Shown: positions 1-52,131, numbered from the stretch's first letter. The stretch: 64,000 nt of DNA from Auanema rhodensis (GCA_964057225.1 OZ059894.1:11656001-11720000); one strand, 5' to 3'. Made by a program: numbers and translations. The notes: generated from the letters alone by a model not told the origin.

Positions 1-190
1 TGTTGTTAATAGTTAGGACCACAAAGAAAACAACAGGAACAGTAACAAATGAAATGCCCAAACTTTACAGTGTTCGAGTTATTTACAGTATCTAAGACTA
101 CCTCTGTCGTGTTATTAGAGCAAACATTCGATTAACAACAACTTTTTTTTAGTTATCAAAGCTTTTTTATTTCTTCAAAAAATTTCAAAT

Positions 191-201
191 AAAATATAAA
201 A
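191..201 (-). terminator. Pol III oligo-T terminator of 5S; representative copy
   Basis: TTTTATATTTT at the 5S 3' end. Confidence 0.75.
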
Positions 202-319
202 GCTTACGACACCCGGGATTCCCAAGCCGTCTCCGATCCAAGTACTAACCGGGCCCAACGTTGCTTGACTTGCCAGATCGGACGGGATGGCGTACTTTCA
301 ACGTGGTATGGTCGTAAGC
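201..319 (-). rRNA. 5S rRNA
   Basis: 119 nt GCTTACGACCATACCACGTTGAAAG...CCGATCT...GTTAGTACTTGGATCGGAGAC...GTCGTAAGCT; terminal helix I, box A, box C, oligo-T terminator. Confidence 0.98.

Positions 320-464: not shown

Positions 465-505
<41 letters not shown>
465..505. repeat. (TA)n microsatellite, one per unit, variable length; representative copy
   Basis: Seen directly; shortest near 7895 and 37223, longest near 27293, 39684 and 60724. Confidence 0.98.
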
Positions 506-507
<2 letters not shown>

Positions 508-1321
508 ACAGTAAAAAGTCCAATCAAGAGAGAAATTTTTTCAACACATAGTTGTTTTTTTTTTAAATATCATTGTTTTTCCTCATAACTCGGTTTAAAC
601 TCGTTCTAACCCGTTGAAATACGTCTAGAAAGTCTTTATAACATGCATATGTATGATAGAACTTCATATTTATTGTAATAGAAAATTTTATTTTCAGACG
701 TCTTGGTTAACAATGATATGTTTTACCCCCTTATAATTTTTATCATAATGTTCCTTATACGGAACGCTCAATGAAACTTGCTTCCAGAAAAATTTCTTTC
801 TATTTTTTCTTCATATGTACGTAGATACTATAGAGAACTATGATAGAAAACTTTAACATTCACGAAATCATCATTTCTCATTACGCTACGGAGGTTTAAA
901 AAGCTGTGTTTTACCTTATAATAGACCGGAAAACCCTTGTGTTAAAACTGGACCGTTTTTACACATATAAAAATGTCCCGTATTCGGGACCCTAATGTAA
1001 CTTTTGATTCCCTATATTTTTTTTCATGAAATTTACAATCTACTGTAGAAAGAAGAATTATTTTTATAAAAACTGTAAATTTTTGAAAAATGAAAACAAA
1101 ACGAAAACAAAAACAACTTTTTTTTGAACATTTTCTCACACAAGGGTCCCCCCTTACCTACTTTTTTTCTCATTACTCGTTTCAACCTCATCCGATCACT
1201 CTGCAAACATGTTTAATCGTTCTAACTTGTTGAAATACGTCTTAAAAGTCTAAACAACATGCATATGCATAATAGAAACCACCCGAATAGGCCCCCACGC
1301 ACTAAACGAGATATATACATT

Positions 1322-1455
1322 ACCAGTATAGTAATAGAACACATATTGAAGATTAATTCGATAAGAACAATTTATTGACGTAGAGAATGTTTGTTCCGAA
1401 AAACTACAATATTAAACTATAAAAGTAACAAAAGCGTAGAGGCAGCAAAGACATG
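1322..1455 (-). mobile_element. Fossil element B junction (B 3' end + U2 nt 39-79 + first 10 nt of B), present in every unit; representative copy
   Basis: 1322-1331 = 16229-16238; 1332-1372 = U2 nt 79-39 with 5 mismatches; 1373 onward aligns with 15496 onward, fading near 1455. Confidence 0.85.
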
Positions 1456-1688
1456 AATAAACATAAATGTAAATACAGAATTACCAGGTAGTACATAAGT
1501 ATGACAAAAAATTATAAGAAAGCCATGAAAATAGAAGGTTTGTGAACAAATGAGAGGTACATCTTTGATCGTATAGTCATTTCTAAACCGTTCGTATGCT
1601 GCAGCATCGTCATAAGCGTCACTCAAGTTGAATTTCCATGTGTACTACACGATTTTCATTCTTATTGTTACATTCTTTCCCTGAGGGA

Positions 1689-1873
1689 ATGGGCCGTTCC
1701 CGCCAGCAGTGCAAGAGCGGGTCGACCCGTGAGGTGGAGCTAGCAAGCCAGCATCTACCTCAAGTCTCAAAAATCGGTTAACCTTATTGTGAACCAATGG
1801 AACACATATCGAAGGTTAATTCGATAAGAACGATTACTACACTTTGATCTTAGCCAAAAGGCCGAGAAGCGAT
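1689..1873 (-). ncRNA. U2: U2 snRNA
   Basis: ATCGCTTCTCGGCCTTTTGGCTAAGATC 5' end; GTAGTA; stem IIa TATCGAA/TTCGATA; IIc TTAACCT/AGGTTAA; Sm site GATTTTTGA; stem III; loop IV TTGCAC; 3' end approximate. Confidence 0.97.
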
Positions 1874-2315
1874 ACAGCATAGCCATGAGTATCAAAGACA
1901 TCAAGCAAATGTATCGTACTTGTTACGAGTGCACTCTCTCATTTGAATATAAAAGTGTGGTTTGACAATCTTGACTGTACAGGTCATAAATGGCTCATAT
2001 AAACTGTGGATTTACTCAACTTTTGGACTTATTTTTTTCTTATTCGAAGCGCTGCACTTTTTTCTATTCTTTTTATTCAAATACTTGTATATAGTTTTAT
2101 ATGTACGGTTGCAAAGTTTCCGAATATTTTATATATTTTTATACAATAATTAGGAGAAGGTTAATACAATGAAATCTCCCAACTTTACAGTGTTTGTATT
2201 GCTTACAGTATCTAGAACAACCACTCTTGTAATATTAGAGCACATATCAATCAACAACTTTTTCTAGTTATCAAAGCTTTTTTATTTCTTCAAGATATTT
2301 CAAATAAAATATAAA

Positions 2316-2434
2316 AGCTTACGACACCCGGGATTCCCAAGCCGTCTCCGATCCAAGTACTAACCGGGCCCAACGTTGCTTGACTTGCCAGATCGGACGG
2401 GATGGCGTACTTTCAACGTGGTATGGTCGTAAGC
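2316..2434 (-). rRNA. 5S rRNA
   Basis: Copy of 201-319. Confidence 0.98.
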
Positions 2435-2675
2435 AATGTTATATTCTTCATTATCAGTTATATCACTCTAAATCTTGTTGTTAATAGTTAGGACCACAAA
2501 GAAAACAACAGGAACAGTAACAAATGAAATGCCCAAACTTTACAGTGTTCGAGTTATTTACAGTATCTAAGACTACCTCTGTCGTGTTATTAGAGCAAAC
2601 ATTCGATTAACAACAACTTTTTTTTAGTTATCAAAGCTTTTTTATTTCTTCAAAAAATTTCAAATAAAATATAAA

Positions 2676-2794
2676 AGCTTACGACACCCGGGATTCCCAA
2701 GCCGTCTCCGATCCAAGTACTAACCGGGCCCAACGTTGCTTGACTTGCCAGATCGGACGGGATGGCGTACTTTCAACGTGGTATGGTCGTAAGC
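2676..2794 (-). rRNA. 5S rRNA
   Basis: Copy of 201-319. Confidence 0.98.
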
Positions 2795-2936
2795 AATGTC
2801 ATATTCTTCATTATCAGTTATATCACTCTAAATCTTGTTGTTAATAGATACGACCACAAAGAAAACAACAGGAACAGTAACAATAACAAAAAAAAATTTT
2901 TTTTCACCTATGTGTCTAAAGGTTAGCCATGTATCC

Positions 2937-2982
<46 letters not shown>

Positions 2983-4163
2983 ACAGTAAAAAGTCCAATC
3001 AAGAGAGAAATTTTTTCAACACATAGTTGTTTTTTTTTTAAATATCATTGTTTTTCCTCATAACTCGGTTTAAACTCGTTCTAACCCGTTGAAATACGTC
3101 TAGAAAGTCTTTATAACATGCATATGTATGATAGAACTTCATATTTATTGTAATAGAAAATTTTATTTTCAGACGTCTTGGTTAACAATGATATGTTTTA
3201 CCCCCTTATAATTTTTATCATAATGTTCCTTATACGGAACGCTCAATGAAACTTGCTTCCAGAAAAATTTCTTTCTATTTTTTCTTCATATGTACGTAGA
3301 TACTATAGAGAACTATGATAGAAAACTTTAACATTCACGAAATCATCATTTCTCATTACGCTACGGAGGTTTAAAAAGCTGTGTTTTACCTTATAATAGA
3401 CCGGAAAACCCTTGTGTTAAAACTGGACCGTTTTTACACATATAAAAATGTCCCGTATTCGGGACCCTAATGTAACTTTTGATTCCCTATATTTTTTTTC
3501 ATGAAATTTACAATCTACTGTAGAAAGAAGAATTATTTTTATAAAAACTGTAAATTTTTGAAAAATGAAAACAAAACGAAAACAAAAACAACTTTTTTTT
3601 GAACATTTTCTCACACAAGGGTCCCCCCTTACCTACTTTTTTTCTCATTACTCGTTTCAACCTCATCCGATCACTCTGCAAACATGTTTAATCGTTCTAA
3701 CTTGTTGAAATACGTCTTAAAAGTCTAAACAACATGCATATGCATAATAGAAACCACCCGAATAGGCCCCCACGCACTAAACGAGATATATACATTACCA
3801 GTATAGTAATAGAACACATATTGAAGATTAATTCGATAAGAACAATTTATTGACGTAGAGAATGTTTGTTCCGAAAAACTACAATATTAAACTATAAAAG
3901 TAACAAAAGCGTAGAGGCAGCAAAGACATGAATAAACATAAATGTAAATACAGAATTACCAGGTAGTACATAAGTATGACAAAAAATTATAAGAAAGCCA
4001 TGAAAATAGAAGGTTTGTGAACAAATGAGAGGTACATCTTTGATCGTATAGTCATTTCTAAACCGTTCGTATGCTGCAGCATCGTCATAAGCGTCACTCA
4101 AGTTGAATTTCCATGTGTACTACACGATTTTCATTCTTATTGTTACATTCTTTCCCTGAGGGA

Positions 4164-10399: not shown

Positions 10400-11580
10400 A
10401 CAGTAAAAAGTCCAATCAAGAGAGAAATTTTTTCAACACATAGTTTTTTTTTTTTTAAATATCATTGTTTTTCCTCATAACTCGGTTTAAACTCGTTCTA
10501 ACCCGTTGAAATACGTCTAGAAAGTCTTTATAACATGCATATGTATGATAGAACTTCATATTTATTGTAATAGAAAATTTTATTTTCAGACGTCTTGGTT
10601 AACAATGATATGTTTTACCCCCTTATAATTTTTATCATAATGTTCCTTATACGGAACGCTCAATGAAACTTGCTTCCAGAAAAATTTCTTTCTATTTTTT
10701 CTTCATATGTACGTAGATACTATAGAGAACTATGATAGAAAACTTTAACATTCACGAAATCATCATTTCTCATTACGCTACGGAGGTTTAAAAAGCTGTG
10801 TTTTACCTTATAATAGACCGGAAAACCCTTGTGTTAAAACTGGACCGTTTTTACACATATAAAAATGTCCCGTATTCGGGACCCTAATGTAACTTTTGAT
10901 TCCCTATATTTTTTTTCATGAAATTTACAATCTACTGTAGAAAGAAGAATTATTTTTATAAAAACTGTAAATTTTTGAAAAATGAAAACAAAACGAAAAC
11001 AAAAACAACTTTTTTTTGAACATTTTCTCACACAAGGGTCCCCCCTTACCTACTTTTTTTCTCATTACTCGTTTCAACCTCATCCGATCACTCTGCAAAC
11101 ATGTTTAATCGTTCTAACTTGTTGAAATACGTCTTAAAAGTCTAAACAACATGCATATGCATAATAGAAACCACCCGAATAGGCCCCCACGCACTAAACG
11201 AGATATATACATTACCAGTATAGTAATAGAACACATATTGAAGATTAATTCGATAAGAACAATTTATTGACGTAGAGAATGTTTGTTCCGAAAAACTACA
11301 ATATTAAACTATAAAAGTAACAAAAGCGTAGAGGCAGCAAAGACATGAATAAACATAAATGTAAATACAGAATTACCAGGTAGTACATAAGTATGACAAA
11401 AAATTATAAGAAAGCCATGAAAATAGAAGGTTTGTGAACAAATGAGAGGTACATCTTTGATCGTATAGTCATTTCTAAACCGTTCGTATGCTGCAGCATC
11501 GTCATAAGCGTCACTCAAGTTGAATTTCCATGTGTACTACACGATTTTCATTCTTATTGTTACATTCTTTCCCTGAGGGA

Positions 11581-11728
11581 ATGGGCCGTTCCCGCCAGCA
11601 GTGCAAGAGCGGGTCGACCCGTGAGGTGGAGCTAGCAAGCCAGCATCTACCTCAAGTCTCAAAAATCGGTTAACCTTATTGTGAACCAATGGAACACATA
11701 TCGAAGGTTAATTCGATAAGAACGATTA
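11581..11728 (-). pseudogene. U2: 3' part (nt 38-end) of interrupted U2 gene
   Basis: Identical to array U2 downstream of the insertion site. Confidence 0.95.
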
Positions 11729-14700
11729 ATGGTTTATTGAATAACTAATGTTATGATACAATAAATAACCAATAAAAAAGAGCCCAGAATCGGGGAGACG
11801 GTATTACCAGTACAACTTAAAACAGCAAGTAATTAAAAAGTACATAATAAGACACATTGCCAACAGAGGCTAAAACGACTCAAGAGTCGGGGGAGTGGGT
11901 TAAAAAAAATGAACAAAAAAATGAATATTAAAGCAGAACAATGAGAAATCAAGTGCCGCTATGATCAAACAATTTGAGTGCCTACGGCAATGATGTTAAA
12001 AATAAACAACAAAATACATGTACCAATGAAGGTCAGAAAGAAAGAAACAAAAGACAAAAATAAGTAATACAAAAAGTAAATACATTACAATCAAATCACA
12101 AACAAGTCAATTGATAATTTCTTCTTCATATTGCCTTACACCAGAAACATGTTCCACGTAGATATTCCTGGCCCACTTGATGGTATCGGCGACGACGAGC
12201 TTCTCCATTAGCCGGTTGTAGTGGCTGCTGATCTTGAGTGATCGGAGGGCTTGTCCGTTGAGCGGGTCCATAGTTCCAAGCATTCCTACGACATACGCTT
12301 CTACACTAGTCTTATAACCAAGACATTGGTATTGGCTGGCTATGTCAGCATATTTCCTCTCCTTTATCATACGCGCGGCTATCATGGCTTGACGGCGGTT
12401 TTCATAGCTCACTGTAACATCAACGATACTACAGTGTTTTGCGTCATGATCGACCACTACTATGTCAGGTCGGAGTGTACTATTAATGCCAGGAAGAGGC
12501 TGGTTAGTGTAAACTTCTCCGTTTTTAGGCTCTGGCAGGGCTTTGATAAGACGGTCCACGATGTTGTTGTGGCGGAGTTGGATTGCTCTCGTGTGAGAGT
12601 GGCAGTGTCCAAGAACATGTGCAGCAGTTTCGTTGGAGTAACTACACCTGCGGCACTGTTTGTTTCCTTCTCCGTGTCTTCTACAGCCATTGAGCTGGAG
12701 AGTATTGAGTCGAGCCTTGTGGATGAATCGCCAATCAGCAAACCGTATGAAATCTCCCTTCGCCATAAAGTGATTGGACGCTTTGTTGAGCATTGTGACA
12801 TCAAAGACTTTCCCTTGATCCGGTTTTTGAAGAAGGATCCGAAGGTCTTTCAGCCATAATGCACGTCGCAGGCTTCTGTGGCATAGTGAAGGTGTTAACA
12901 GTTGGTTGTTTAGATTGAGTTCTAAACCACTTTCGAGGCATGTCCAGTTAGCGTTGATGAGTTTCTTGAGTTGACGCATCGCTACTCTTACTCTAGTCCA
13001 GATGGAGGAAACATCAGATGTTTCGGTGTCGAAAATGCCATCAACGGAACCGTTGTAATATGCAGCTGTCTCATCGTTACTGGCTTGACGTTTAATCCTT
13101 TTTGATGCTACTTTTTTTGAGTCTTGATGCGCAATATCAGCTACTACAAGATCAGATGACTTCAAAAGTTGGTAGGCATGAGTGACTTCACAGACGTCTG
13201 ACAGGTGTTGGAGTCGAGAGAGACCAAGTCCGCCGTAGTTAGTTGGCAGGTAGATTGGTTCAGCACTGGCGTTTGGAGGATAGTGCATCCATCTACGGGC
13301 ACAGCGTTTGAGTTCTTTGTCAAAGGCGACTAGTTTACTCTTTGGGACGTGGCCATTCGTCATATGAAAATTAAGGCAGGGCATCAGGAAGGTGCGTACT
13401 GCGTCAGCTTTCTGCCATTCAGCAAGTAAGGATTTGTCAATTTTTTCCAAGTGTTGACTCATAATATTCACTGTTGGAACCGCAGACTTATGTAAATGCA
13501 TTCCAGTAGGGATTCCCAGGTGGGAGTAGCTGTCGAATTTGCTGAGAGCGGGTAGAGAGGAGCTCTGTAGCATGTATGAGGCTGTTGATATTTTCCCTTT
13601 GTCGATCGTCAAGGTGGCGCATTTCGCTGGTTTGAAGGTCAAGCCTGTGAAATTAGCCGCATTTGATGCTGCGTCCAACATTTTCTGTAGATCTTCTGAT
13701 GATGAGGAGACCAGGGCAAGGTCATCGGCGTACGCTAGCACAGCGATGTTGTGGTTGTGTAGCTTATAGCCAGTAGAGGATTCCAAGATGGTTTTAATTA
13801 GAGGTTCAATGGCAAGGTTGAACAGGATCGGAGATAGTGGGGATCCTTGTAACACACCTGCATGAACTGGAATGGTCGATGTGAGTCCGGAGCCTGTCTG
13901 GATTCTTGTAGAGGCATCTGTGTATAGAGCTCGTACTCGGGATATTGAGGCTTCAGCCACTCCTGACCATCTTAGAACGTCTAGCAGAGTTTCGTGTGGC
14001 AGCGATCCAAAAGCGTTTGCGAGATCAAGCCAAGCAATTGCAATTTTCTCACGTTTACGTTTAGCGTCCGCAATGGTACTTTGCAACATAAAGTTGTGTT
14101 CCATGCATCCAGCTTTGGCCACAAAGCCCTTTTGGGAGGGAGAAAGTCTTTTTTCTGCTCTTGCCCATGTTAGCAGTCGATGCGTAAGACAAGCTGAGTA
14201 CGTCTTACCAATTGTGCACGAAAGTGCTATTGGTCGCCAGTTGTTAATGTCAGCTTTATCACCTTTCTTATGGATGAGGACGGTGGTCGACTCTTTCCAG
14301 GAAAAAGGGATGTGTCCTAGCTTGTGTACGGTGTTAAATATCGCTGCTAATATGTGACCTCCTTGGTCAAATTTCTTCCAGTGCGAGTATCGAAGTCCAT
14401 CAGCTCCTGGAGCCGTATCGCTGCAACGTCGTATGCGTTCCCAGACTTCCAAAGGGGTGAAAACACCTTCTAATGGGTCGGTACTAGCTGGCAAATCCGG
14501 TCTGGTGACTGTGATGGGGAGGGCTGGGCCTTGACTGCTGTGAACAGAAAGGAAATGTTTTTCAACCTCTGCAGATGGTATGGTGCAGGTTTCACTTTGT
14601 TCTCCGAGCAGTTGTCGAAAGGCTTTCTTCTTGTTGGCCCTCCAGAGCTTCTGGAGCTTCATCGCCTGGGTTTTTTGGTCTTCCTCAGGTTGTGTGTGTG

Positions 14701-15437
14701 GTCGGCGCCTTTGTCGGAAGTTGGGAACTTTGATCATAATGTCAAGAGACTTTCTGATTGCGTCTACCAACTCTTCCAGGACCTGCTCGAGCTCACTTTT
14801 GCACACAACCTTTTTAATTCTATCCACCCAAGTATTTTCAGAGTTTCTATTCGGATCAGGGTCGGCAAAAAATGGTTCTGTACTCGAAACCCTGATCTCG
14901 TTGAATATTTCACTCTCTCGCGGAAGGGGGGAAACTTCGGCCTCTGGGGACAAGTCCAGAATTGGGGCCTCAAACAAGCGTACCGTTGATGGAGATCCTT
15001 GTTCCTGTCCACTGGATGATGTTTCCTCCATTGTACGCTCCTCCACGGGCGGGGTGGTCGTCCTTGTGCCTGGTGGGCGGGTGTTCCTGATCCTCCGCAA
15101 TATAGGGCGGGAACTGGGCTCTCTCGGAGATAGAGGTGAGATCACCACAGTTTCCTCTATGATGCGGAGGCATCCTTCAGCTTTTTTCTGATGGCTTTTA
15201 ACGGCCTTCAGATTGCTGGTGAGGCCACAGGCACGGCACTCAAATTCTACTCCGACCTCATGTTCTCTCCGAAGATGGCGGACGAGACCATTGTGGTCTG
15301 AGTAGGATCGCGGAATAGGAGCGCAGATTGAACAAGAAAAAGGGCTCTGAAGAGGCACCTTTAGCTTGTAAAGCCCTTGCTCCATCTCTAGCAGATCTAA
15401 AGACTTACGTAGTACAGTTGCAATATCGATTTAGCCA
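11729..15437 (-). mobile_element. Element A copy 1: near-full-length U2-targeting RLE non-LTR retrotransposon (Utopia-like, NeSL-related)
   Basis: Single ZnF-RT-RLE ORF; ~380-bp AT-rich 3' UTR ending AATAAACC; joined to U2 nt 38-end downstream and U2 nt 39-96 upstream; same orientation as U2. Confidence 0.95.
12107..15385 (-). CDS. Reverse transcriptase / restriction-like endonuclease polyprotein (1092 aa)
   Basis: N-terminal C2H2 (CSIC..H....H) and C2HC (CRAC..H..C) zinc fingers; RT motifs APGADG, WRPIAL, QKGF, WLDLANAFGS, GVLQGSPLSP, YADD, YSHLG; CCHC knuckle CRRC..ETAAHVLGHC; RHN; RLE core RPD..DVT..E..KERKY; C-terminal IYVEHVSGVRQY. Confidence 0.97.
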   Translation of the reverse strand: MEQGLYKLKVPLQSPFSCSICAPIPRSYSDHNGLVRHLRREHEVGVEFECRACGLTSNLKAVKSHQKKAEGCLRIIEETVVISPLSPREPSSRPILRRIRNTRPPGTRTTTPPVEERTMEETSSSGQEQGSPSTVRLFEAPILDLSPEAEVSPLPRESEIFNEIRVSSTEPFFADPDPNRNSENTWVDRIKKVVCKSELEQVLEELVDAIRKSLDIMIKVPNFRQRRRPHTQPEEDQKTQAMKLQKLWRANKKKAFRQLLGEQSETCTIPSAEVEKHFLSVHSSQGPALPITVTRPDLPASTDPLEGVFTPLEVWERIRRCSDTAPGADGLRYSHWKKFDQGGHILAAIFNTVHKLGHIPFSWKESTTVLIHKKGDKADINNWRPIALSCTIGKTYSACLTHRLLTWARAEKRLSPSQKGFVAKAGCMEHNFMLQSTIADAKRKREKIAIAWLDLANAFGSLPHETLLDVLRWSGVAEASISRVRALYTDASTRIQTGSGLTSTIPVHAGVLQGSPLSPILFNLAIEPLIKTILESSTGYKLHNHNIAVLAYADDLALVSSSSEDLQKMLDAASNAANFTGLTFKPAKCATLTIDKGKISTASYMLQSSSLPALSKFDSYSHLGIPTGMHLHKSAVPTVNIMSQHLEKIDKSLLAEWQKADAVRTFLMPCLNFHMTNGHVPKSKLVAFDKELKRCARRWMHYPPNASAEPIYLPTNYGGLGLSRLQHLSDVCEVTHAYQLLKSSDLVVADIAHQDSKKVASKRIKRQASNDETAAYYNGSVDGIFDTETSDVSSIWTRVRVAMRQLKKLINANWTCLESGLELNLNNQLLTPSLCHRSLRRALWLKDLRILLQKPDQGKVFDVTMLNKASNHFMAKGDFIRFADWRFIHKARLNTLQLNGCRRHGEGNKQCRRCSYSNETAAHVLGHCHSHTRAIQLRHNNIVDRLIKALPEPKNGEVYTNQPLPGINSTLRPDIVVVDHDAKHCSIVDVTVSYENRRQAMIAARMIKERKYADIASQYQCLGYKTSVEAYVVGMLGTMDPLNGQALRSLKISSHYNRLMEKLVVADTIKWARNIYVEHVSGVRQYEEEIIN

Positions 15438-15495
15438 TTAACCTTATTGTGAACCAATGGAACACATATCGAAGGTTAATTCGATAAGAACGATT
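15438..15495 (-). pseudogene. U2 snRNA fragment (nt 39-96) between element B and element A; target-site duplication
   Basis: 58 bp identical to array U2 nt 39-96. Confidence 0.95.
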
Positions 15496-16238
15496 TATTG
15501 ACGTAGAGAATGTTTGTCCCGGAGGACTACAATTTAAAAAAATAATTACTGAAGCCGGAAGGCAGCGAGAAATAAAATGGATACTACCTGCACTGAGTGC
15601 GTCGTATCAAAAAAAAAAAGAGAATGATAGTCTTAAAGAAGAGAACAGCACATAAAGAAAAGTAGAACTTCCATCTGATGCTACGGGTTTAGAGGAATAG
15701 CTTATGTCAGATATCGGTTAAACATAAATGATTAGGGCAATTGCGGAACAAGGATAGTGTAATTAACATTGTTTACAGAGTTCAGGTTCTGAAGCTACGG
15801 ATAAAGAAGGGTTAGCTTGACAGATTGAAGTTAAAATGAACAACGTGGCATATTTCAGTACAGCACAATAGTAATAGCGAGACTACGGAAAAAAAAAAAA
15901 AGCTCTGTTCTGGTCCTGGAACGGCGGCTTCGACGTCTTCTGGGTGCCACTGCGGTTTGAAGGGTCAGCTAGCTTAACAGTAGAACGGCGGCAAGGCGGA
16001 ACAGGAGAAGAACATCGACGATCCTCCGGCTCGGCTGTCATAGTGTGCGACTTCTTGTTCATAATGGTAGCGGTGTCCTCGTGCTTCTTCTTTCTCCACA
16101 AAAATTACTACACTATCTGAGCGGGAGAAGCCACAGATAACATAGGACCGCCTCAAGGCCTGGTAGATCAACCAGTGTTGCTTCAATCACCAAGTATTGC
16201 GGCCTGGGCCCTTGGATCAATTCACAACACCAGTATAG
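15496..16238 (-). mobile_element. Element B: ~743-bp non-autonomous element inserted at the same U2 site
   Basis: No RT or endonuclease ORF; 3' end CGTCAATA joined to U2 nt 39; 5' end CTATACTGGT joined to U2 nt 79; both termini recur, decayed, in every array unit. Confidence 0.8.
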
Positions 16239-16317
16239 CAATGGAACACATATCGAAGGTTAATTCGATAAGAACGATTACTACACTTTGATCTTAGCCA
16301 AAAGGCCGAGAAGCGAT
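16239..16317 (-). pseudogene. U2: 5' part (nt 1-79) of interrupted U2 gene with intact upstream region
   Basis: Identical to U2 nt 1-79, then switches to element B. Confidence 0.95.
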
Positions 16318-16759
16318 ACAGCATAGCCATGAGTATCAAAGACATCAAGCAAATGTATCGTACTTGTTACGAGTGCACTCTCTCATTTGAATATAAAAGT
16401 GTGGTTTGACAATCTTGACTGTACAGGTCATAAATGGCTCATATAAACTGTGGATTTACTCAACTTTTGGACTTATTTTTTTCTTATTCGAAGCGCTGCA
16501 CTTTTTTCTATTCTTTTTATTCAAATACTTGTATATAGTTTTATATGTACGGTTGCAAAGTTTCCGAATATTTTATATATTTTTATACAATAATTAGGAG
16601 AAGGTTAATACAATGAAATCTCCCAACTTTACAGTGTTTGTATTGCTTACAGTATCTAGAACAACCACTCTTGTAATATTAGAGCACATATCAATCAACA
16701 ACTTTTTCTAGTTATCAAAGCTTTTTTATTTCTTCAAGATATTTCAAATAAAATATAAA

Positions 16760-17432: not shown

Positions 17433-18613
17433 ACAGTAAAAAGTCCAATCAAGAGAGAAATTTTTTCAACACATAGTTGTTTTTTTTTTAAATATCATTG
17501 TTTTTCCTCATAACTCGGTTTAAACTCGTTCTAACCCGTTGAAATACGTCTAGAAAGTCTTTATAACATGCATATGTATGATAGAACTTCATATTTATTG
17601 TAATAGAAAATTTTATTTTCAGACGTCTTGGTTAACAATGATATGTTTTACCCCCTTATAATTTTTATCATAATGTTCCTTATACGGAACGCTCAATGAA
17701 ACTTGCTTCCAGAAAAATTTCTTTCTATTTTTTCTTCATATGTACGTAGATACTATAGAGAACTATGATAGAAAACTTTAACATTCACGAAATCATCATT
17801 TCTCATTACGCTACGGAGGTTTAAAAAGCTGTGTTTTACCTTATAATAGACCGGAAAACCCTTGTGTTAAAACTGGACCGTTTTTACACATATAAAAATG
17901 TCCCGTATTCGGGACCCTAATGTAACTTTTGATTCCCTATATTTTTTTTCATGAAATTTACAATCTACTGTAGAAAGAAGAATTATTTTTATAAAAACTG
18001 TAAATTTTTGAAAAATGAAAACAAAACGAAAACAAAAACAACTTTTTTTTGAACATTTTCTCACACAAGGGTCCCCCCTTACCTACTTTTTTTCTCATTA
18101 CTCGTTTCAACCTCATCCGATCACTCTGCAAACATGTTTAATCGTTCTAACTTGTTGAAATACGTCTTAAAAGTCTAAACAACATGCATATGCATAATAG
18201 AAACCACCCGAATAGGCCCCCACGCACTAAACGAGATATATACATTACCAGTATAGTAATAGAACACATATTGAAGATTAATTCGATAAGAACAATTTAT
18301 TGACGTAGAGAATGTTTGTTCCGAAAAACTACAATATTAAACTATAAAAGTAACAAAAGCGTAGAGGCAGCAAAGACATGAATAAACATAAATGTAAATA
18401 CAGAATTACCAGGTAGTACATAAGTATGACAAAAAATTATAAGAAAGCCATGAAAATAGAAGGTTTGTGAACAAATGAGAGGTACATCTTTGATCGTATA
18501 GTCATTTCTAAACCGTTCGTATGCTGCAGCATCGTCATAAGCGTCACTCAAGTTGAATTTCCATGTGTACTACACGATTTTCATTCTTATTGTTACATTC
18601 TTTCCCTGAGGGA

Positions 18614-18798
18614 ATGGGCCGTTCCCGCCAGCAGTGCAAGAGCGGGTCGACCCGTGAGGTGGAGCTAGCAAGCCAGCATCTACCTCAAGTCTCAAAAATC
18701 GGTTAACCTTATTGTGAACCAATGGAACACATATCGAAGGTTAATTCGATAAGAACGATTACTACACTTTGATCTTAGCCAAAAGGCCGAGAAGCGAT
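18614..18798 (-). ncRNA. U2: U2 snRNA
   Basis: Copy of 1689-1873. Confidence 0.97.
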
Positions 18799-45834: not shown

Positions 45835-46088
45835 ATGGGCCGTTCCCGCCAGCAGTGCAAGAGCGGGTCGACCCGTGAGGTGGAGCTAGCAAGCCAGCAT
45901 CTACCTCAAGTCTCAAAAATCGGTTAACATTATTGTGAACCAATGGAACACATATCGAAGGTTAATTCGATAAGAACGATTAATGGTTTATTGAATAACT
46001 AATGTTATGAAACAATAAATAACCAATAAAAAAGAGCCCAGAATCGGGGAGACGCACTTTGATCTTAGCCAAAAGGCCGAGAAGCGAT
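45835..46088 (-). pseudogene. U2: U2 gene disrupted by 72-bp element A stub
   Basis: Branch-point recognition sequence split; additional substitution at 45929 in the stem IIc strand. Confidence 0.93.
45983..46054 (-). mobile_element. Element A copy 3: 72-bp 3'-terminal stub (extreme 5' truncation) with 3-bp target deletion
   Basis: Matches 11729-11800 except one substitution; unit is 69 bp longer; replaces U2 nt 35-37. Confidence 0.95.
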
Positions 46089-48896: not shown

Positions 48897-51800
48897 GGTT
48901 TATTGAATAACTAATGTTATGATACAATAAATAACCAATAAAAAAGAGCCCAGAATCGGGGAGACGGTATTACCAGTACAACTTAAAACAGCAAGTAATT
49001 AAAAAGTACATAATAAGACACATTGCCAACAGAGGCTAAAACGACTCAAGAGTCGGGGGAGTGGGTTAAAAAAAATGAACAAAAAAATGAATATTAAAGC
49101 AGAACAATGAGAAATCAAGTGCCGCTATGATCAAACAATTTGAGTGCCTACGGCAATGATGTTAAAAATAAACAACAAAATACATGTACCAATGAAGGTC
49201 AGAAAGAAAGAAACAAAAGACAAAAATAAGTAATACAAAAAGTAAATACATTACAATCAAATCACAAACAAGTCAATTGATAATTTCTTCTTCATATTGC
49301 CTTACACCAGAAACATGTTCCACGTAGATATTCCTGGCCCACTTGATGGTATCGGCGACGACGAGCTTCTCCATTAGCCGGTTGTAGTGGCTGCTGATCT
49401 TGAGTGATCGGAGGGCTTGTCCGTTGAGCGGGTCCATAGTTCCAAGCATTCCTACGACATATGCTTCTACACTAGTCTTATAACCAAGACATTGGTATTG
49501 GCTGGCTATGTCAGCATATTTCCTCTCCTTTATCATACGCGCGGCTATCATGGCTTGACGGCGGTTTTCATAGCTCACTGTAACATCAACGATACTACAG
49601 TGTTTTGCGTCATGATCGACCACTACTATGTCAGGTCGGAGTGTACTATTAATGCCAGGAAGAGGCTGGTTAGTGTAAACTTCTCCGTTTTTAGGCTCTG
49701 GCAGGGCTTTGATAAGACGGTCCACGATGTTGTTGTGGCGGAGTTGGATTGCTCTCGTGTGAGAGTGGCAGTGTCCAAGAACATGTGCAGCAGTTTCGTT
49801 GGAGTAACTACACCTGCGGCACTGTTTGTTTCCTTCTCCGTGTCTTCTACAGCCATTGAGCTGGAGAGTATTGAGTCGAGCCTTGTGGATGAATCGCCAA
49901 TCAGCAAACCGTATGAAATCTCCCTTCGCCATAAAGTGATTGGACGCTTTGTTGAGCATTGTGACATCAAAGACTTTCCCTTGATCCGGTTTTTGAAGAA
50001 GGATCCGAAGGTCTTTCAGCCATAATGCACGTCGCAGGCTTCTGTGGCATAGTGAAGGTGTTAACAGTTGGTTGTTTAGATTGAGTTCTAAACCACTTTC
50101 GAGGCATGTCCAGTTAGCGTTGATGAGTTTCTTGAGTTGACGCATCGCTACTCTTACTCTAGTCCAGATGGAGGAAACATCAGATGTTTCGGTGTCGAAA
50201 ATGCCATCAACGGAACCGTTGTAATATGCAGCTGTCTCATCGTTACTGGCTTGACGTTTAATCCTTTTTGATGCTACTTTTTTTGAGTCTTGATGCGCAA
50301 TATCAGCTACTACAAGATCAGATGACTTCAAAAGTTGGTAGGCATGAGTGACTTCACAGACGTCTGACAGGTGTTGGAGTCGAGAGAGACCAAGTCCGCC
50401 GTAGTTAGTTGGCAGGTAGATTGGTTCAGCACTGGCGTTTGGAGGATAGTGCATCCATCTACGGGCACAGCGTTTGAGTTCTTTGTCAAAGGCGACTAGT
50501 TTACTCTTTGGGACGTGGCCATTCGTCATATGAAAATTAAGGCAGGGCATCAGGAAGGTGCGTACTGCGTCAGCTTTCTGCCATTCAGCAAGTAAGGATT
50601 TGTCAATTTTTTCCAAGTGTTGACTCATAATATTCACTGTTGGAACCGCAGACTTATGTAAATGCATTCCAGTAGGGATTCCCAGGTGGGAGTAGCTGTC
50701 GAATTTGCTGAGAGCGGGTAGAGAGGAGCTCTGTAGCATGTATGAGGCTGTTGATATTTTCCCTTTGTCGATCGTCAAGGTGGCGCATTTCGCTGGTTTG
50801 AAGGTCAAGCCTGTGAAATTAGCCGCATTTGATGCTGCGTCCAACATTTTCTGTAGATCTTCTGATGATGAGGAGACCAGGGCAAGGTCATCGGCGTACG
50901 CTAGCACAGCGATGTTGTGGTTGTGTAGCTTATAGCCAGTAGAGGATTCCAAGATGGTTTTAATTAGAGGTTCAATGGCAAGGTTGAACAGGATCGGAGA
51001 TAGTGGGGATCCTTGTAACACACCTGCATGAACTGGAATGGTCGATGTGAGTCCGGAGCCTGTCTGGATTCTTGTAGAGGCATCTGTGTATAGAGCTCGT
51101 ACTCGGGATATTGAGGCTTCAGCCACTCCTGACCATCTTAGAACGTCTAGCAGAGTTTCGTGTGGCAGCGATCCAAAAGCGTTTGCGAGATCAAGCCAAG
51201 CAATTGCAATTTTCTCACGTTTACGTTTAGCGTCCGCAATGGTACTTTGCAACATAAAGTTGTGTTCCATGCATCCAGCTTTGGCCACAAAGCCCTTTTG
51301 GGAGGGAGAAAGTCTTTTTTCTGCTCTTGCCCATGTTAGCAGTCGATGCGTAAGACAAGCTGAGTACGTCTTACCAATTGTGCACGAAAGTGCTATTGGT
51401 CGCCAGTTGTTAATGTCAGCTTTATCACCTTTCTTATGGATGAGGACGGTGGTCGACTCTTTCCAGGAAAAAGGGATGTGTCCTAGCTTGTGTACGGTGT
51501 TAAATATCGCTGCTAATATGTGACCTCCTTGGTCAAATTTCTTCCAGTGCGAGTATCGAAGTCCATCAGCTCCTGGAGCCGTATCGCTGCAACGTCGTAT
51601 GCGTTCCCAGACTTCCAAAGGGGTGAAAACACCTTCTAATGGGTCGGTACTAGCTGGCAAATCCGGTCTGGTGACTGTGATGGGGAGGGCTGGGCCTTGA
51701 CTGCTGTGAACAGAAAGGAAATGTTTTTCAACCTTTGCAGATGGTATGGTGCAGGTTTCACTTTGTTCTCCGAGCAGTTGTCGAAAGGCTTTCTTCTTGT

Positions 51801-52131
51801 TGGCCCTCCAGAGCTTCTGGAGCTTCATCGCCTGGGTTTTTTGGTCTTCCTCAGGTTGTGTGTGTGGTCGGCGCCTTTGTCGGAAGTTGGGAACTTTGAT
51901 CATAATGTCAAGAGACTTTCTGATTGCGTCTACCAACTCTTCCAGGACCTGCTCGAGCTCACTTTTGCACACAACCTTTTTAATTCTATCCACCCAAGTA
52001 TTTTCAGAGTTTCTATTCGGATCAGGGTCGGCAAAAAATGGTTCTGTACTCGAAACCCTGATCTCGTTGAATATTTCACTCTCTCGCGGAAGGGGGGAAA
52101 CTTCGGCCTCTGGGGACAAGTCCAGAATTGG
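48897..52131 (-). mobile_element. Element A copy 2: 5'-truncated (3.2 kb)
   Basis: Near-identical to copy 1 from the 3' end to ...CCCAATTCTGG; flanked by U2 nt 1-110 upstream and nt 36-end downstream. Confidence 0.95.
49273..52119 (-). CDS. 5'-truncated RT/RLE ORF lacking the N-terminal zinc fingers (predicted start is an internal TTG)
   Basis: Matches aa 145-1092 of the copy 1 protein except one E->K (TIPSAEV/TIPSAKV). Confidence 0.85.
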   Translation of the reverse strand: MSPEAEVSPLPRESEIFNEIRVSSTEPFFADPDPNRNSENTWVDRIKKVVCKSELEQVLEELVDAIRKSLDIMIKVPNFRQRRRPHTQPEEDQKTQAMKLQKLWRANKKKAFRQLLGEQSETCTIPSAKVEKHFLSVHSSQGPALPITVTRPDLPASTDPLEGVFTPLEVWERIRRCSDTAPGADGLRYSHWKKFDQGGHILAAIFNTVHKLGHIPFSWKESTTVLIHKKGDKADINNWRPIALSCTIGKTYSACLTHRLLTWARAEKRLSPSQKGFVAKAGCMEHNFMLQSTIADAKRKREKIAIAWLDLANAFGSLPHETLLDVLRWSGVAEASISRVRALYTDASTRIQTGSGLTSTIPVHAGVLQGSPLSPILFNLAIEPLIKTILESSTGYKLHNHNIAVLAYADDLALVSSSSEDLQKMLDAASNAANFTGLTFKPAKCATLTIDKGKISTASYMLQSSSLPALSKFDSYSHLGIPTGMHLHKSAVPTVNIMSQHLEKIDKSLLAEWQKADAVRTFLMPCLNFHMTNGHVPKSKLVAFDKELKRCARRWMHYPPNASAEPIYLPTNYGGLGLSRLQHLSDVCEVTHAYQLLKSSDLVVADIAHQDSKKVASKRIKRQASNDETAAYYNGSVDGIFDTETSDVSSIWTRVRVAMRQLKKLINANWTCLESGLELNLNNQLLTPSLCHRSLRRALWLKDLRILLQKPDQGKVFDVTMLNKASNHFMAKGDFIRFADWRFIHKARLNTLQLNGCRRHGEGNKQCRRCSYSNETAAHVLGHCHSHTRAIQLRHNNIVDRLIKALPEPKNGEVYTNQPLPGINSTLRPDIVVVDHDAKHCSIVDVTVSYENRRQAMIAARMIKERKYADIASQYQCLGYKTSVEAYVVGMLGTMDPLNGQALRSLKISSHYNRLMEKLVVADTIKWARNIYVEHVSGVRQYEEEIIN

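What the first reader, a model, noticed from the sequence alone, without database searches (positions are those of the whole stretch)
15496..16317. Element B: candidate U2-headed, U2-site-specific non-autonomous retroelement parasitising a Utopia-like element
Seen: 743 bp with no RT or endonuclease, bounded by U2 nt 79 and U2 nt 39, with a GC-richer structured 5' half, an AT-rich tail and internal T-runs on the sense strand that would stop Pol III. No evident similarity to A beyond terminal TCAATAAA. The exact U2-G79|CTATACTGGT junction recurs in the much older fossil, so it is a fixed property of B. Inference: B is transcribed from the host U2 promoter as U2(1-79)+B, and is reinserted into U2 genes by an RLE protein in trans, regenerating its own head and promoter each time. 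This would be a three-tier host snRNA / LINE / SINE-like system. Known analogues are R2-dependent SIDEs in rDNA and dispersed snRNA-headed SINEU; I know of no U2-site-specific version but cannot search.
Basis: partly seen in the sequence, partly recalled or inferred. Interest (0 to 1): 0.88.

Follow-up and report, generated by a model that had tools for sequence, protein, structure and literature searches.

The report
Non-coding rider elements in U2 genes
A 743-base stretch with no protein-coding capacity sits inside a U2 snRNA gene, at the exact base used by U2-specific (Utopia-type) retrotransposons. It belongs to a 47-copy family found only at that site. The family most likely borrows a retrotransposon's enzyme to copy itself, but actual jumping and its RNA have not been seen.

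Summary
B (window 16238->15496, U2 sense) is 743 bp with no RT, endonuclease or conserved ORF. It is bounded by U2 nt 79 and U2 nt 39.

B is not A's leader and not a lone relic:
- The genome holds 47 copies in four subfamilies: B1 743 bp x3, B2 783 x3, B3 788 x28, B4 865 x12.
- All 47 lie in one ~1.2-Mb U2/5S array. All 33 copies I read have the flanks U2(1-79)|B|U2(39-...), most without A.
- The 5' (~100 nt) and 3' (~90 nt) ends are conserved; the core is scrambled.

New here: B's last ~80 nt match a second Utopia-like element, E2, not A. E2 is 3938 bp, single-copy, with one in-frame stop.

Best reading (confidence about 0.6): a non-autonomous retroelement copied in trans, whose RNA carries a U2 head that rebuilds the target site and allows stacking.

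Array recombination could explain much of the spread.

The scan has already reported this system several times elsewhere in this genome. I found no paper describing a Utopia-dependent rider. Novelty: a new variant of a known kind (R2 SIDE-like).

The parts
16239..16317 (-). U2 head: U2 nt 1-79 directly upstream of B. It is preceded by a U2 upstream region (16318-16617) identical to that of intact units.
   Evidence: 100% over U2 -299..79; Rfam U2.
15496..16238 (-). Element B, subfamily B1: 743 bp, non-coding.
   Evidence: Three genomic copies at >=99.9% identity.
16129..16238 (-). B 5' module (nt 1-110). The first ~100 nt are 97-100% identical among B1-B3 and ~68-84% identical to B4. It contains a 20-mer invariant in all 47 copies.
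15622..16128 (-). B variable core. Identity between subfamilies is 16-85% per 50 columns. It holds conserved islands, including four pyrimidine-run + CCGYAG motifs.
15496..15621 (-). B 3' module (nt 618-743). The last ~80 nt are shared with E2 (78-82%) and with the spacer fossil.
15516..15532 (-). Small hairpin motif in the 3' module: a 4-bp stem with a UNCG-like loop, 20 nt from the 3' end. It is present in B1-B4, E2 and the fossil, and absent from A.
   Evidence: 100% of cells paired, one compensatory change; statistically weak. 46 genomic places.
15438..15495 (-). U2 nt 39-96: the head of element A, which follows B's 3' end.
11729..15437 (-). Element A: an intact Utopia-like retrotransposon. 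Its ORF is 15385->12107 (1092 aa) with RT, a CCHC finger and a restriction-like endonuclease.
11576..11728 (-). U2 nt 38-190 downstream of A.
18247..18515 (-). One example of the fossil present in every array unit: an E2-like 3' tail (18515->18298), then U2 nt 39-78 (18297->18258), then A+CTATACTGGT (18257->18247).
   Evidence: About 400 units genome-wide.
48897..52131 (-). 5'-truncated copy of A (A nt 473-3707, 99.9%), flanked by U2 nt 110 and nt 36.
45983..46054 (-). 72-bp remnant of A's 3' end, flanked by U2 nt 34 and nt 38.

Best explanation
B is one subfamily (B1) of a non-autonomous, non-coding retroelement family that lives only in U2 snRNA genes.

Proposed cycle:
1. A B-bearing U2 gene is transcribed from the U2 gene's own upstream promoter. 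The RNA therefore starts with U2 sequence, including at least nt <=38 to 79.
2. A Utopia-type RT/endonuclease supplied in trans nicks another U2 gene between nt 38 and 39. It starts reverse transcription at B's 3' module.
3. The end of the cDNA, complementary to the U2 head, anneals to the upstream half of the target and primes the second strand.
4. Every full-length copy therefore ends up as U2(1-79)|B|U2(39-190).

The rebuilt U2(1-79) is again a complete target site, so elements stack.

The enzyme most likely comes from the E2 lineage, which shares B's terminal ~80 nt and hairpin. Cross-use of the abundant, intact element A is possible.

What is shown and what is inferred:
- Shown: the anatomy, the copy census, the site specificity, the shared tail, and the pattern of conservation.
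- Inferred: transcription, the trans-acting enzyme, and the annealing step.
For: 1. Family and site.
- There are 47 copies of an invariant 5' 20-mer and 46 B-type 3' motifs. All lie on one contig between 10.91 and 12.10 Mb, all in U2 orientation, and they pair 1:1.
- All 33 copies I could read have U2 nt 61-79 directly upstream and U2 nt 39-60 directly downstream.
- B1's core occurs nowhere else in 181 Mb.
- U2 nt 39 is the published Utopia 3' junction (PMC4640811).

2. Independence from A. The B copies in L002-L004, L006-L027, L029-L030 and left:12757 are solo, with U2 39-190 intact downstream.

3. Element-level selection. The ends are conserved (84-100% among B1-B3) and the core is not (16-85% per 50 columns).

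4. A LINE-derived tail. A profile of B1-B4 hits only the last ~80 nt of E2 (E 7e-14) and nothing in A. The hairpin is kept in B1-B4, E2 and the fossil.

5. A helper is available.
- A has an intact 1092-aa RT-CCHC-RLE ORF and at least 64 3' ends.
- 5'-truncated A copies join U2 at many different positions (U2 nt 2, 20, 34, 38, 110, 230). This marks independent recent TPRT events in this array.

6. The head is specific to each family, not to the cut.
- Full-length A always joins at U2-96 (5/5), E2 at U2-89, and B at U2-79 (33/33).
- B4 also joins at U2-79 although it has 11 extra nt right at the junction.
- R2 shows the same logic: upstream target sequence retained on the RNA gives uniform 5' junctions (PMC3774820).

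7. Stacks with B upstream of another element.
- B1|A in the window and B2|A in L005.
- B4|B3 at left:163767-165458.
- Four B4 copies in tandem with a 906-bp period.
- An old E2-tail|U2 39-78|B-start fossil in every unit.

8. A weak hint of RNA. Three small runs of ~20 M letters, of uncertain type, hold 69% of B1's sampled words.
Against:
- There is no 5'-truncated B copy: 46 tails against 47 heads. There is also no variable 5' junction and no poly(A) or other 3' tail. None of the classical footprints of independent TPRT events is seen for B itself.
- Copies within a subfamily are nearly identical. 13 B3 copies sit in consecutive units, so much of the copy number comes from array amplification.
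- Every stack can also arise by crossover between the 41-58-nt U2 segments.
- E2, the lineage whose tail B carries, is single-copy and has an in-frame stop. A's tail lacks the hairpin.
- Folding energies and four-sequence covariation give no support for a structured 5' module.
- No relatives in other genomes could be examined.
Confidence: 0.6

Rival explanations
1. Dead relics spread only at the DNA level. One or a few ancient insertions, possibly internally rearranged E2-type copies, were carried through the array by unequal crossover, unit duplication and gene conversion. B no longer transposes, or never did as such.
For: - 28 B3 copies are almost all identical, and many sit in consecutive 3.3-kb units.
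- No B copy is truncated or has a variant junction.
- One B2 copy and one B3 copy share a 3'-end variant, which points to gene conversion between subfamilies.
- Crossover within U2 39-79 or 39-96 would reproduce every stack seen.
Against: - Neutral relics should decay evenly. Instead the ends are 84-100% conserved and the core is scrambled.
- Identical B4 copies occur as far-apart singletons, in solo, A|B4, B4|B3 and four-fold tandem contexts.
- The homology available for such crossovers is only 41-58 nt.
- The family is older than the array's homogenisation (a fossil in ~400 units), yet it still has near-identical young copies.
Confidence: 0.22
2. Same retroelement, but the U2 39-79 repeat is a true target-site duplication made afresh at each insertion by a second-strand cut at nt 79/80. 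It is not sequence carried in the RNA.
For: - Truncated A copies show real duplications (U2 36-110 in the window; U2 38-230 at left:123796) as well as deletions. Long staggered resolution therefore does occur here.
- Reptile Utopia make 20-bp duplications (PMC4640811).
Against: - One enzyme should cut at one place, yet full-length B, E2 and A have 79, 89 and 96, each constant within its family.
- Truncated A copies are scattered from nt 2 to nt 230.
- B4 keeps the 79 junction despite an 11-nt indel at the junction.
Confidence: 0.2
3. The helper is A, and not E2.
For: - A is the only element here with an intact ORF. It is abundant and recently active.
- E2 is single-copy and carries a stop.
- The A and B/E2 termini share a weak ATTGTA..AACATT..TCAATA pattern.
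- B1 sits upstream of a young A. Under the stacking model B1 inserted after that A.
Against: - No BLAST or profile similarity between B and A.
- A lacks the conserved hairpin.
- RLE elements of the R2 type are thought to recognise their own 3' UTR (PMC3414825).
Confidence: 0.3
4. B is a host gene: a long non-coding RNA or a variant U2 expressed from U2 promoters and kept for a cellular function.
For: Conserved end modules and an intact U2 promoter and 3' part around solo copies.
Against: - It interrupts U2 right after the branch-site-binding bases.
- No intron-like boundaries could restore U2: there is no AG within U2 39-79 (my own reading of the U2 sequence).
- Its tail is shared with a retrotransposon.
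- It stacks with retrotransposons.
- It matches no RNA family.
Confidence: 0.03

Closest known systems
R2 SIDEs (short internally deleted elements) of Drosophila rDNA (Eickbush & Eickbush 2012, PMC3414825)
   Same: Short, non-coding, low-copy passengers. They sit at the exact site of a restriction-like-endonuclease retrotransposon inside a tandem multicopy RNA gene, are co-transcribed with the host gene, and carry the parent's 3' end for recognition by its RT.
   Different: - SIDEs keep both ends of R2, a 5' ribozyme plus the 3' UTR. Only B's last ~80 nt match an autonomous element; its 5' module and core match none.
- SIDE 5' junctions vary, while B's is invariant.
- The host gene is U2 (RNA polymerase II, snRNA type), not 28S.
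Utopia, U2-gene-specific RLE non-LTR retrotransposons (Kojima & Jurka 2015, PMC4640811)
   Same: The same 3' junction (U2 nt 39), occasional tandem insertions, and several lineages co-resident in U2 arrays. A and E2 have the Utopia domain order (N-terminal fingers, RT, CCHC, RLE).
   Different: - That paper describes only autonomous families.
- Arthropod families make no duplication and reptile families make 20 bp. Here full-length elements carry 41-58 nt of repeated U2.
- No non-coding partner is reported there, nor in the papers my searches found.
R2 elements whose ribozyme cuts upstream in 28S (Eickbush et al. 2013, PMC3774820)
   Same: Target-gene sequence kept at the 5' end of the RNA is proposed to anneal to the target and give uniform 5' junctions. 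This is the same logic I propose for the constant U2-79, -89 and -96 heads.
   Different: - In R2 the retained sequence lies upstream of the insertion site, so nothing is duplicated. Here the head extends 41-58 nt past the site and is duplicated, which rebuilds the target.
- No ribozyme was found here.
SINEU, SINEs with U1/U2-derived heads in crocodilians (Kojima 2015, PMC4494074)
   Same: Non-autonomous retroelements that begin with U2 sequence.
   Different: SINEU are dispersed, have poly(A) tails, prefer a Mariner-type transposon as target and are tied to Tx1-type (AP-endonuclease) elements. B has no poly(A), is confined to U2 genes, and its 'head' is continuous with the host gene it sits in.

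Membership tests
Utopia (for the helpers A and E2) | 3' junction at U2 snRNA nt 38/39 | tested here: met
   A is followed by U2 36-39 and E2 by U2 39. The site is as given in PMC4640811.
Utopia (for the helpers A and E2) | Single ORF with RT followed by a CCHC finger and a PD..(D/E)xK restriction-like endonuclease | tested here: met
   Pfam RVT_1, E 3e-28. YADD, the CCHC motif and the RPD...D.T.SYE...K region were read. E2 is colinear with A (48-60% identity) but has one in-frame stop.
Utopia (for the helpers A and E2) | RT groups with named Utopia families in a phylogeny | not tested
   No Repbase Utopia sequences were on hand. Homologues at 40-56% identity include proteins from Dendroctonus ponderosae, a species listed as a Utopia host, and from nematodes. 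This is suggestive only.
SIDE-type internally deleted derivative | 3' end identical or similar to the autonomous parent's 3' end | tested here: met
   The last ~80 nt of B1-B3 are 78-82% identical to E2's end, with profile E 7e-14. For B4 only ~45 nt align.
SIDE-type internally deleted derivative | 5' end derived from the same autonomous parent | tested here: not met
   BLAST and nhmmer find no likeness of B's 5' module or core to E2 or A.
Classical SINE | Head derived from tRNA, 7SL or 5S with an internal RNA polymerase III promoter | tested here: not met
   An Rfam E-value scan of 15400-16400 finds only U2. Sense-strand T-runs of 7-13 nt would stop polymerase III.
Classical SINE | LINE-derived tail used for trans-mobilisation | tested here: inconclusive
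   The tail is shared with E2. Use of that tail by an RT was not tested.
SINEU | Dispersed copies with a U1/U2-derived head and a poly(A) tail | tested here: not met
   All 47 copies are inside U2 genes of one array and end in ...TCAATA without poly(A).
Retrotransposed element in general | Independent insertion events (truncations, variable junctions, insertion polymorphism) | tested here: inconclusive
   No B copy is truncated or has a variant junction. Stacks and scattered singletons fit insertion but also recombination.

The most novel reading that the evidence does not exclude
B-bearing U2 genes are transcribed and finished by the normal snRNA machinery into a capped, Sm-site-bearing 'giant U2' of about 975 nt, U2(1-79)+B+U2(39-190). 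The rider would thereby use the snRNP pathway for stability and return to the nucleus. It would then be reverse-transcribed into another U2 gene, and each insertion would rebuild a whole target site. This would be a self-renewing landing pad shared by a three-level community of U2 gene, Utopia lineages and riders.

In addition, the functional U2 genes of the whole ~400-unit array would descend from a U2 copy rebuilt by a long target duplication during such an insertion. The fossil in every unit is the evidence for that.
Probability: 0.25. Interest if true: 0.8.

Novelty: new variant of a known kind. Interest (0 to 1): 0.58.

Why it matters
Non-autonomous partners of site-specific, restriction-like-endonuclease retrotransposons are rare; the R2 SIDEs are the textbook case. 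My searches found none reported for Utopia or for any snRNA gene.

This array offers an unusually complete natural system:
- about 400 identical targets;
- one active helper (A);
- one nearly dead helper (E2);
- four rider subfamilies that outnumber the lineage whose tail they carry;
- family-specific U2 heads that rebuild the target.

It could show how 5' junctions are formed by this class of enzyme. That question bears on R2-type enzymes now being used for site-specific gene insertion. It could also show how parasites of parasites persist in a small, homogenised target pool.

The advance over known systems is one of degree, and the key steps (RNA, mobility, helper) are unproven.

Tried and rejected
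1. Read evidence. The look-up of sequencing runs gave four small runs of uncertain type. No depth, joint or 5'-end data exist.
   - Local scripts kept using the intact U2 copy at 18609-18798 as an annotation reference. This included a local BLAST of fetched contigs, and one script printed flanks that include U2 5' bases.
2. Fetching the whole array. The census beyond the window, that 200 kb and 30 short loci therefore rests on motif and BLAST coordinates only.
3. Known RNA families and ribozymes. Rfam at E<=10 finds only U2. I did not run an HDV-type descriptor search.
4. Structure. Folding-energy z-scores are unremarkable. The 5' module shows no compensatory pairs. The 3' hairpin is always paired, but 87 of 500 shuffles do as well.
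5. Coding capacity: none conserved.
6. Relatives elsewhere.
   - The invariant B 20-mer in metagenome contigs hit only GC-rich bacterial contigs by chance.
   - Contigs of the two closest A-like proteins show no U2 flanks.
7. The copy at C1:11339143. I confirmed only that it lacks the B-type tail. A's exact terminal 25-mer is not there.
8. A spliceosomal-intron reading that would restore U2: rejected. There is no AG within U2 39-79, so no AG|GT site can be placed in the repeat.
9. B as A's 5' UTR: rejected.

Full report
**Setting.** The window lies in a tandem array of ~2.48-kb units, each with one U2 snRNA gene (minus strand) and two 5S genes. It is C1:11,656,001-11,720,000 of a 181-Mb eukaryotic genome. 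Earlier notes of this scan call it a rhabditid nematode, which I did not verify. Of the 22 U2 genes in the window, three are interrupted.

**Anatomy.** I mapped everything onto an intact U2 (18798->18609, 190 nt). In U2 sense, the interrupted gene of the finding reads as follows:
- U2 upstream region plus nt 1-79: 16617->16239, 100% identical to intact units.
- B: 16238->15496, 743 bp.
- U2 nt 39-96: 15495->15438.
- A: 15437->11729, 3709 bp.
- U2 nt 38-190 and onward.

The other two interrupted genes hold a 5'-truncated A (52131->48897, flanked by U2 110 and 36) and a 72-bp A tail (46054->45983, flanked by U2 34 and 38).

A has an intact 1092-aa ORF with RT, a CCHC finger and a restriction-like endonuclease. 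Its relatives at 40-56% identity include proteins from nematodes and from arthropods such as Dendroctonus, a listed Utopia host. U2 nt 39 is the published 3' junction of Utopia (PMC4640811).

**The observation.** B has no RT, endonuclease or conserved ORF.
- Its 5' half is GC-richer than its 3' half (0.50 against 0.37). It has sense-strand T-runs of 13, 11 and 7.
- It shows no BLAST or profile likeness to A.
- The junction U2-79|CTATACTGGT recurs in the spacer of every unit (23 of 23), though position 79 reads A there.
- The word 'structured' is not borne out. Folding energies of six segments are ordinary (z -1.0 to +2.0). Rfam finds nothing but U2. The four subfamilies give no compensatory pairs in the 5' module.

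**B is a family.**
- A search of the genome with B found two more B1 copies (>=99.9% identical), three 783-bp copies at 68% (B2), and many copies that match only at nt 1-106 and 618-743 (B3, 788 bp).
- The 200 kb I could fetch added an 865-bp form (B4).
- Exact-motif counts give 47 5' modules and 46 B-type 3' modules. All are on C1 between 10.91 and 12.10 Mb, in U2 orientation, and pair 1:1. The breakdown is B3 28, B4 12, B2 3, B1 3, plus one copy without a B-type tail.
- B1's core occurs nowhere else.
- All 33 copies I could read are flanked by U2 ...61-79 upstream and U2 39-60... downstream.
- Most are solo, with U2 39-190 intact behind them, so B is not A's leader.

Between subfamilies the first ~100 and last ~90 nt are 84-100% identical (B1-B3). 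The core falls to 16-85% per 50 columns. Against B4 the same pattern holds at lower levels.

**A second autonomous lineage.** At L037:1685-5622 (C1:10,961,685-10,965,622) lies E2.
- It is a 3938-bp element between U2 nt 89 and U2 nt 39.
- Its A-like ORF (48-60% identity) is broken by one in-frame stop.
- It is single-copy.
- Its last ~80 nt match B1-B3 at 78-82%, and a profile of B1-B4 hits only that stretch (E 7e-14).
- The shared part holds a 4-bp hairpin with a UNCG-like loop. It is paired in B1-B4, E2 and the fossil, with one compensatory change. That support is statistically weak. A lacks the hairpin.
- E2's last 217 nt also match, at 77%, the spacer fossil of every unit. The fossil is therefore E2-type tail | U2 39-78 | B start, an old stack that predates the spread of the ~400 units.

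**Heads and stacks.**
- Full-length A always joins U2 at nt 96 (5 of 5), E2 at nt 89, and B at nt 79.
- B4 also joins at nt 79, although it has 11 extra nt right at the junction.
- Truncated A copies join at U2 nt 2, 20, 34, 38, 110, 230, or far into the spacer.
- The junction is therefore a property of each full-length family, not of a fixed second cut.

The simplest account is the one proposed for R2 elements whose RNA keeps upstream target sequence (PMC3774820). The template RNA begins in U2, and the cDNA end anneals to the upstream half of the target and primes the second strand. Here the retained head runs past the insertion site, so it is duplicated. As a result U2(1-79) or U2(1-96) is a complete new target.

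That explains the stacks:
- A|B4|B3 (left:163615-169323).
- A|B2|A (L005).
- A|B3 (L028).
- B1|A (the window).
- Four B4 copies in tandem with a period of 865+41 bp.

Under this model the upstream member of a stack is the younger one. B1 would then have entered the head of a young A.

**What is not shown.**
- No B copy is truncated or has a variant junction.
- Copies within a subfamily are near-identical (B4: 0 mismatches and 1 gap; B2: 5-9 differences).
- Thirteen B3 copies sit in consecutive units, so array amplification accounts for much of the count.
- Crossover between the 41-58-nt U2 segments could produce each stack.
- RNA evidence failed. The runs found are small and of uncertain type, although they hold 69% of B1's words, which would be hard to reach with 0.1x DNA. 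I kept those letters out of all later searches. Local scripts still used the intact U2 copy at 18609-18798 for annotation.
- The helper is uncertain. B's tail points to E2, which is single-copy and stopped. A is intact and active but unlike B.

**Comparison and novelty.**
- B works like an R2 SIDE (PMC3414825): a short passenger at the site of an RLE retrotransposon in a tandem RNA gene, with the parent's tail. It fails the SIDE test at the 5' end.
- It fails the SINE test, having no polymerase III head.
- It fails the SINEU test, being neither dispersed nor polyadenylated (PMC4494074).
- My literature searches found no non-autonomous Utopia partner.
- This scan has already reported the same system several times on other DNA of this genome.

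**Verdict.** B is a new variant of a known kind, with interest about 0.58.

Noticed in passing
L037:1685-5622 (minus strand; C1:10961685-10965622): E2 is a second Utopia-like autonomous element of 3938 bp. It is single-copy in the genome. Its ORF (816 + 274 codons) is colinear with A's (48-60% identity) but interrupted by one in-frame stop. Its 5' junction is at U2 nt 89, and a truncated A sits in its head.
   Followed up: yes
window 18247-18798 (every unit); compare L043:3796-5134: The spacer fossil has the layout U2(1-190) + 93 nt | E2-type tail | U2 39-78 | B start. A modern truncated A has the same layout: U2(1-190) + 40 nt | A 2619-3709 | U2 38-190. This suggests that the intact U2 gene of the ancestral array unit was rebuilt by a long target duplication during an insertion.
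   Followed up: partly
C1:11633726-11637201 (about 19-22 kb before the window; coordinates only): Four B4 copies lie in direct tandem with a 906-bp period (865 bp plus the 41-nt U2 39-79 piece).
   Followed up: partly
L032:3605-3621 (B4 start); window 15404-15437 (A start): B4 begins with about 17 nt that are roughly the reverse complement of U2 nt 32-48, the branch-site-binding region and insertion site. A's leader holds GTACTAC and a direct U2 18-24-like TGGCTAA.
   Followed up: no
window 15686-15955 (B1 nt 284, 351, 439, 553) and matching places in B2 and B3: Four pyrimidine-run + CCGYAG motifs sit at conserved places in the otherwise scrambled core. They look like nematode 3' splice sites or a repeated protein-binding site. 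Their meaning is unknown.
   Followed up: no
L006:1501-1520 and L023 (3' ends of one B2 copy and one B3 copy): Both carry the same variant, ...AACATTGACTAC..., instead of ...AACATTATCTAC.... This hints at gene conversion between subfamilies.
   Followed up: no
C1:11339132-11339237 and 11338493-11338574 (coordinates only): One B3-like copy has the 5' module and nt 618-699 but no B-type tail. A's exact terminal 25-mer is not found there.
   Followed up: partly
L031-L050 (C1:10.90-11.10 Mb): The array is broken here by blocks of 9-16 kb that match neither the unit, A, B nor E2. A ~404-bp unmatched piece recurs. One unit is inverted (U2 on the plus strand at C1:10958341).
   Followed up: no
C1:11227098-11303446 (coordinates only): A tails and unit fossils lie on the plus strand here, so a stretch of the array of roughly 75 kb is inverted.
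   Followed up: no
window 15386-15437 (A 5' UTR): A's 5' UTR is only 52 nt and has TTTAG and CTAG just before the ATG. These are possible trans-splice acceptor sites that could turn a U2-promoter transcript into an mRNA. This is pure conjecture.
   Followed up: no
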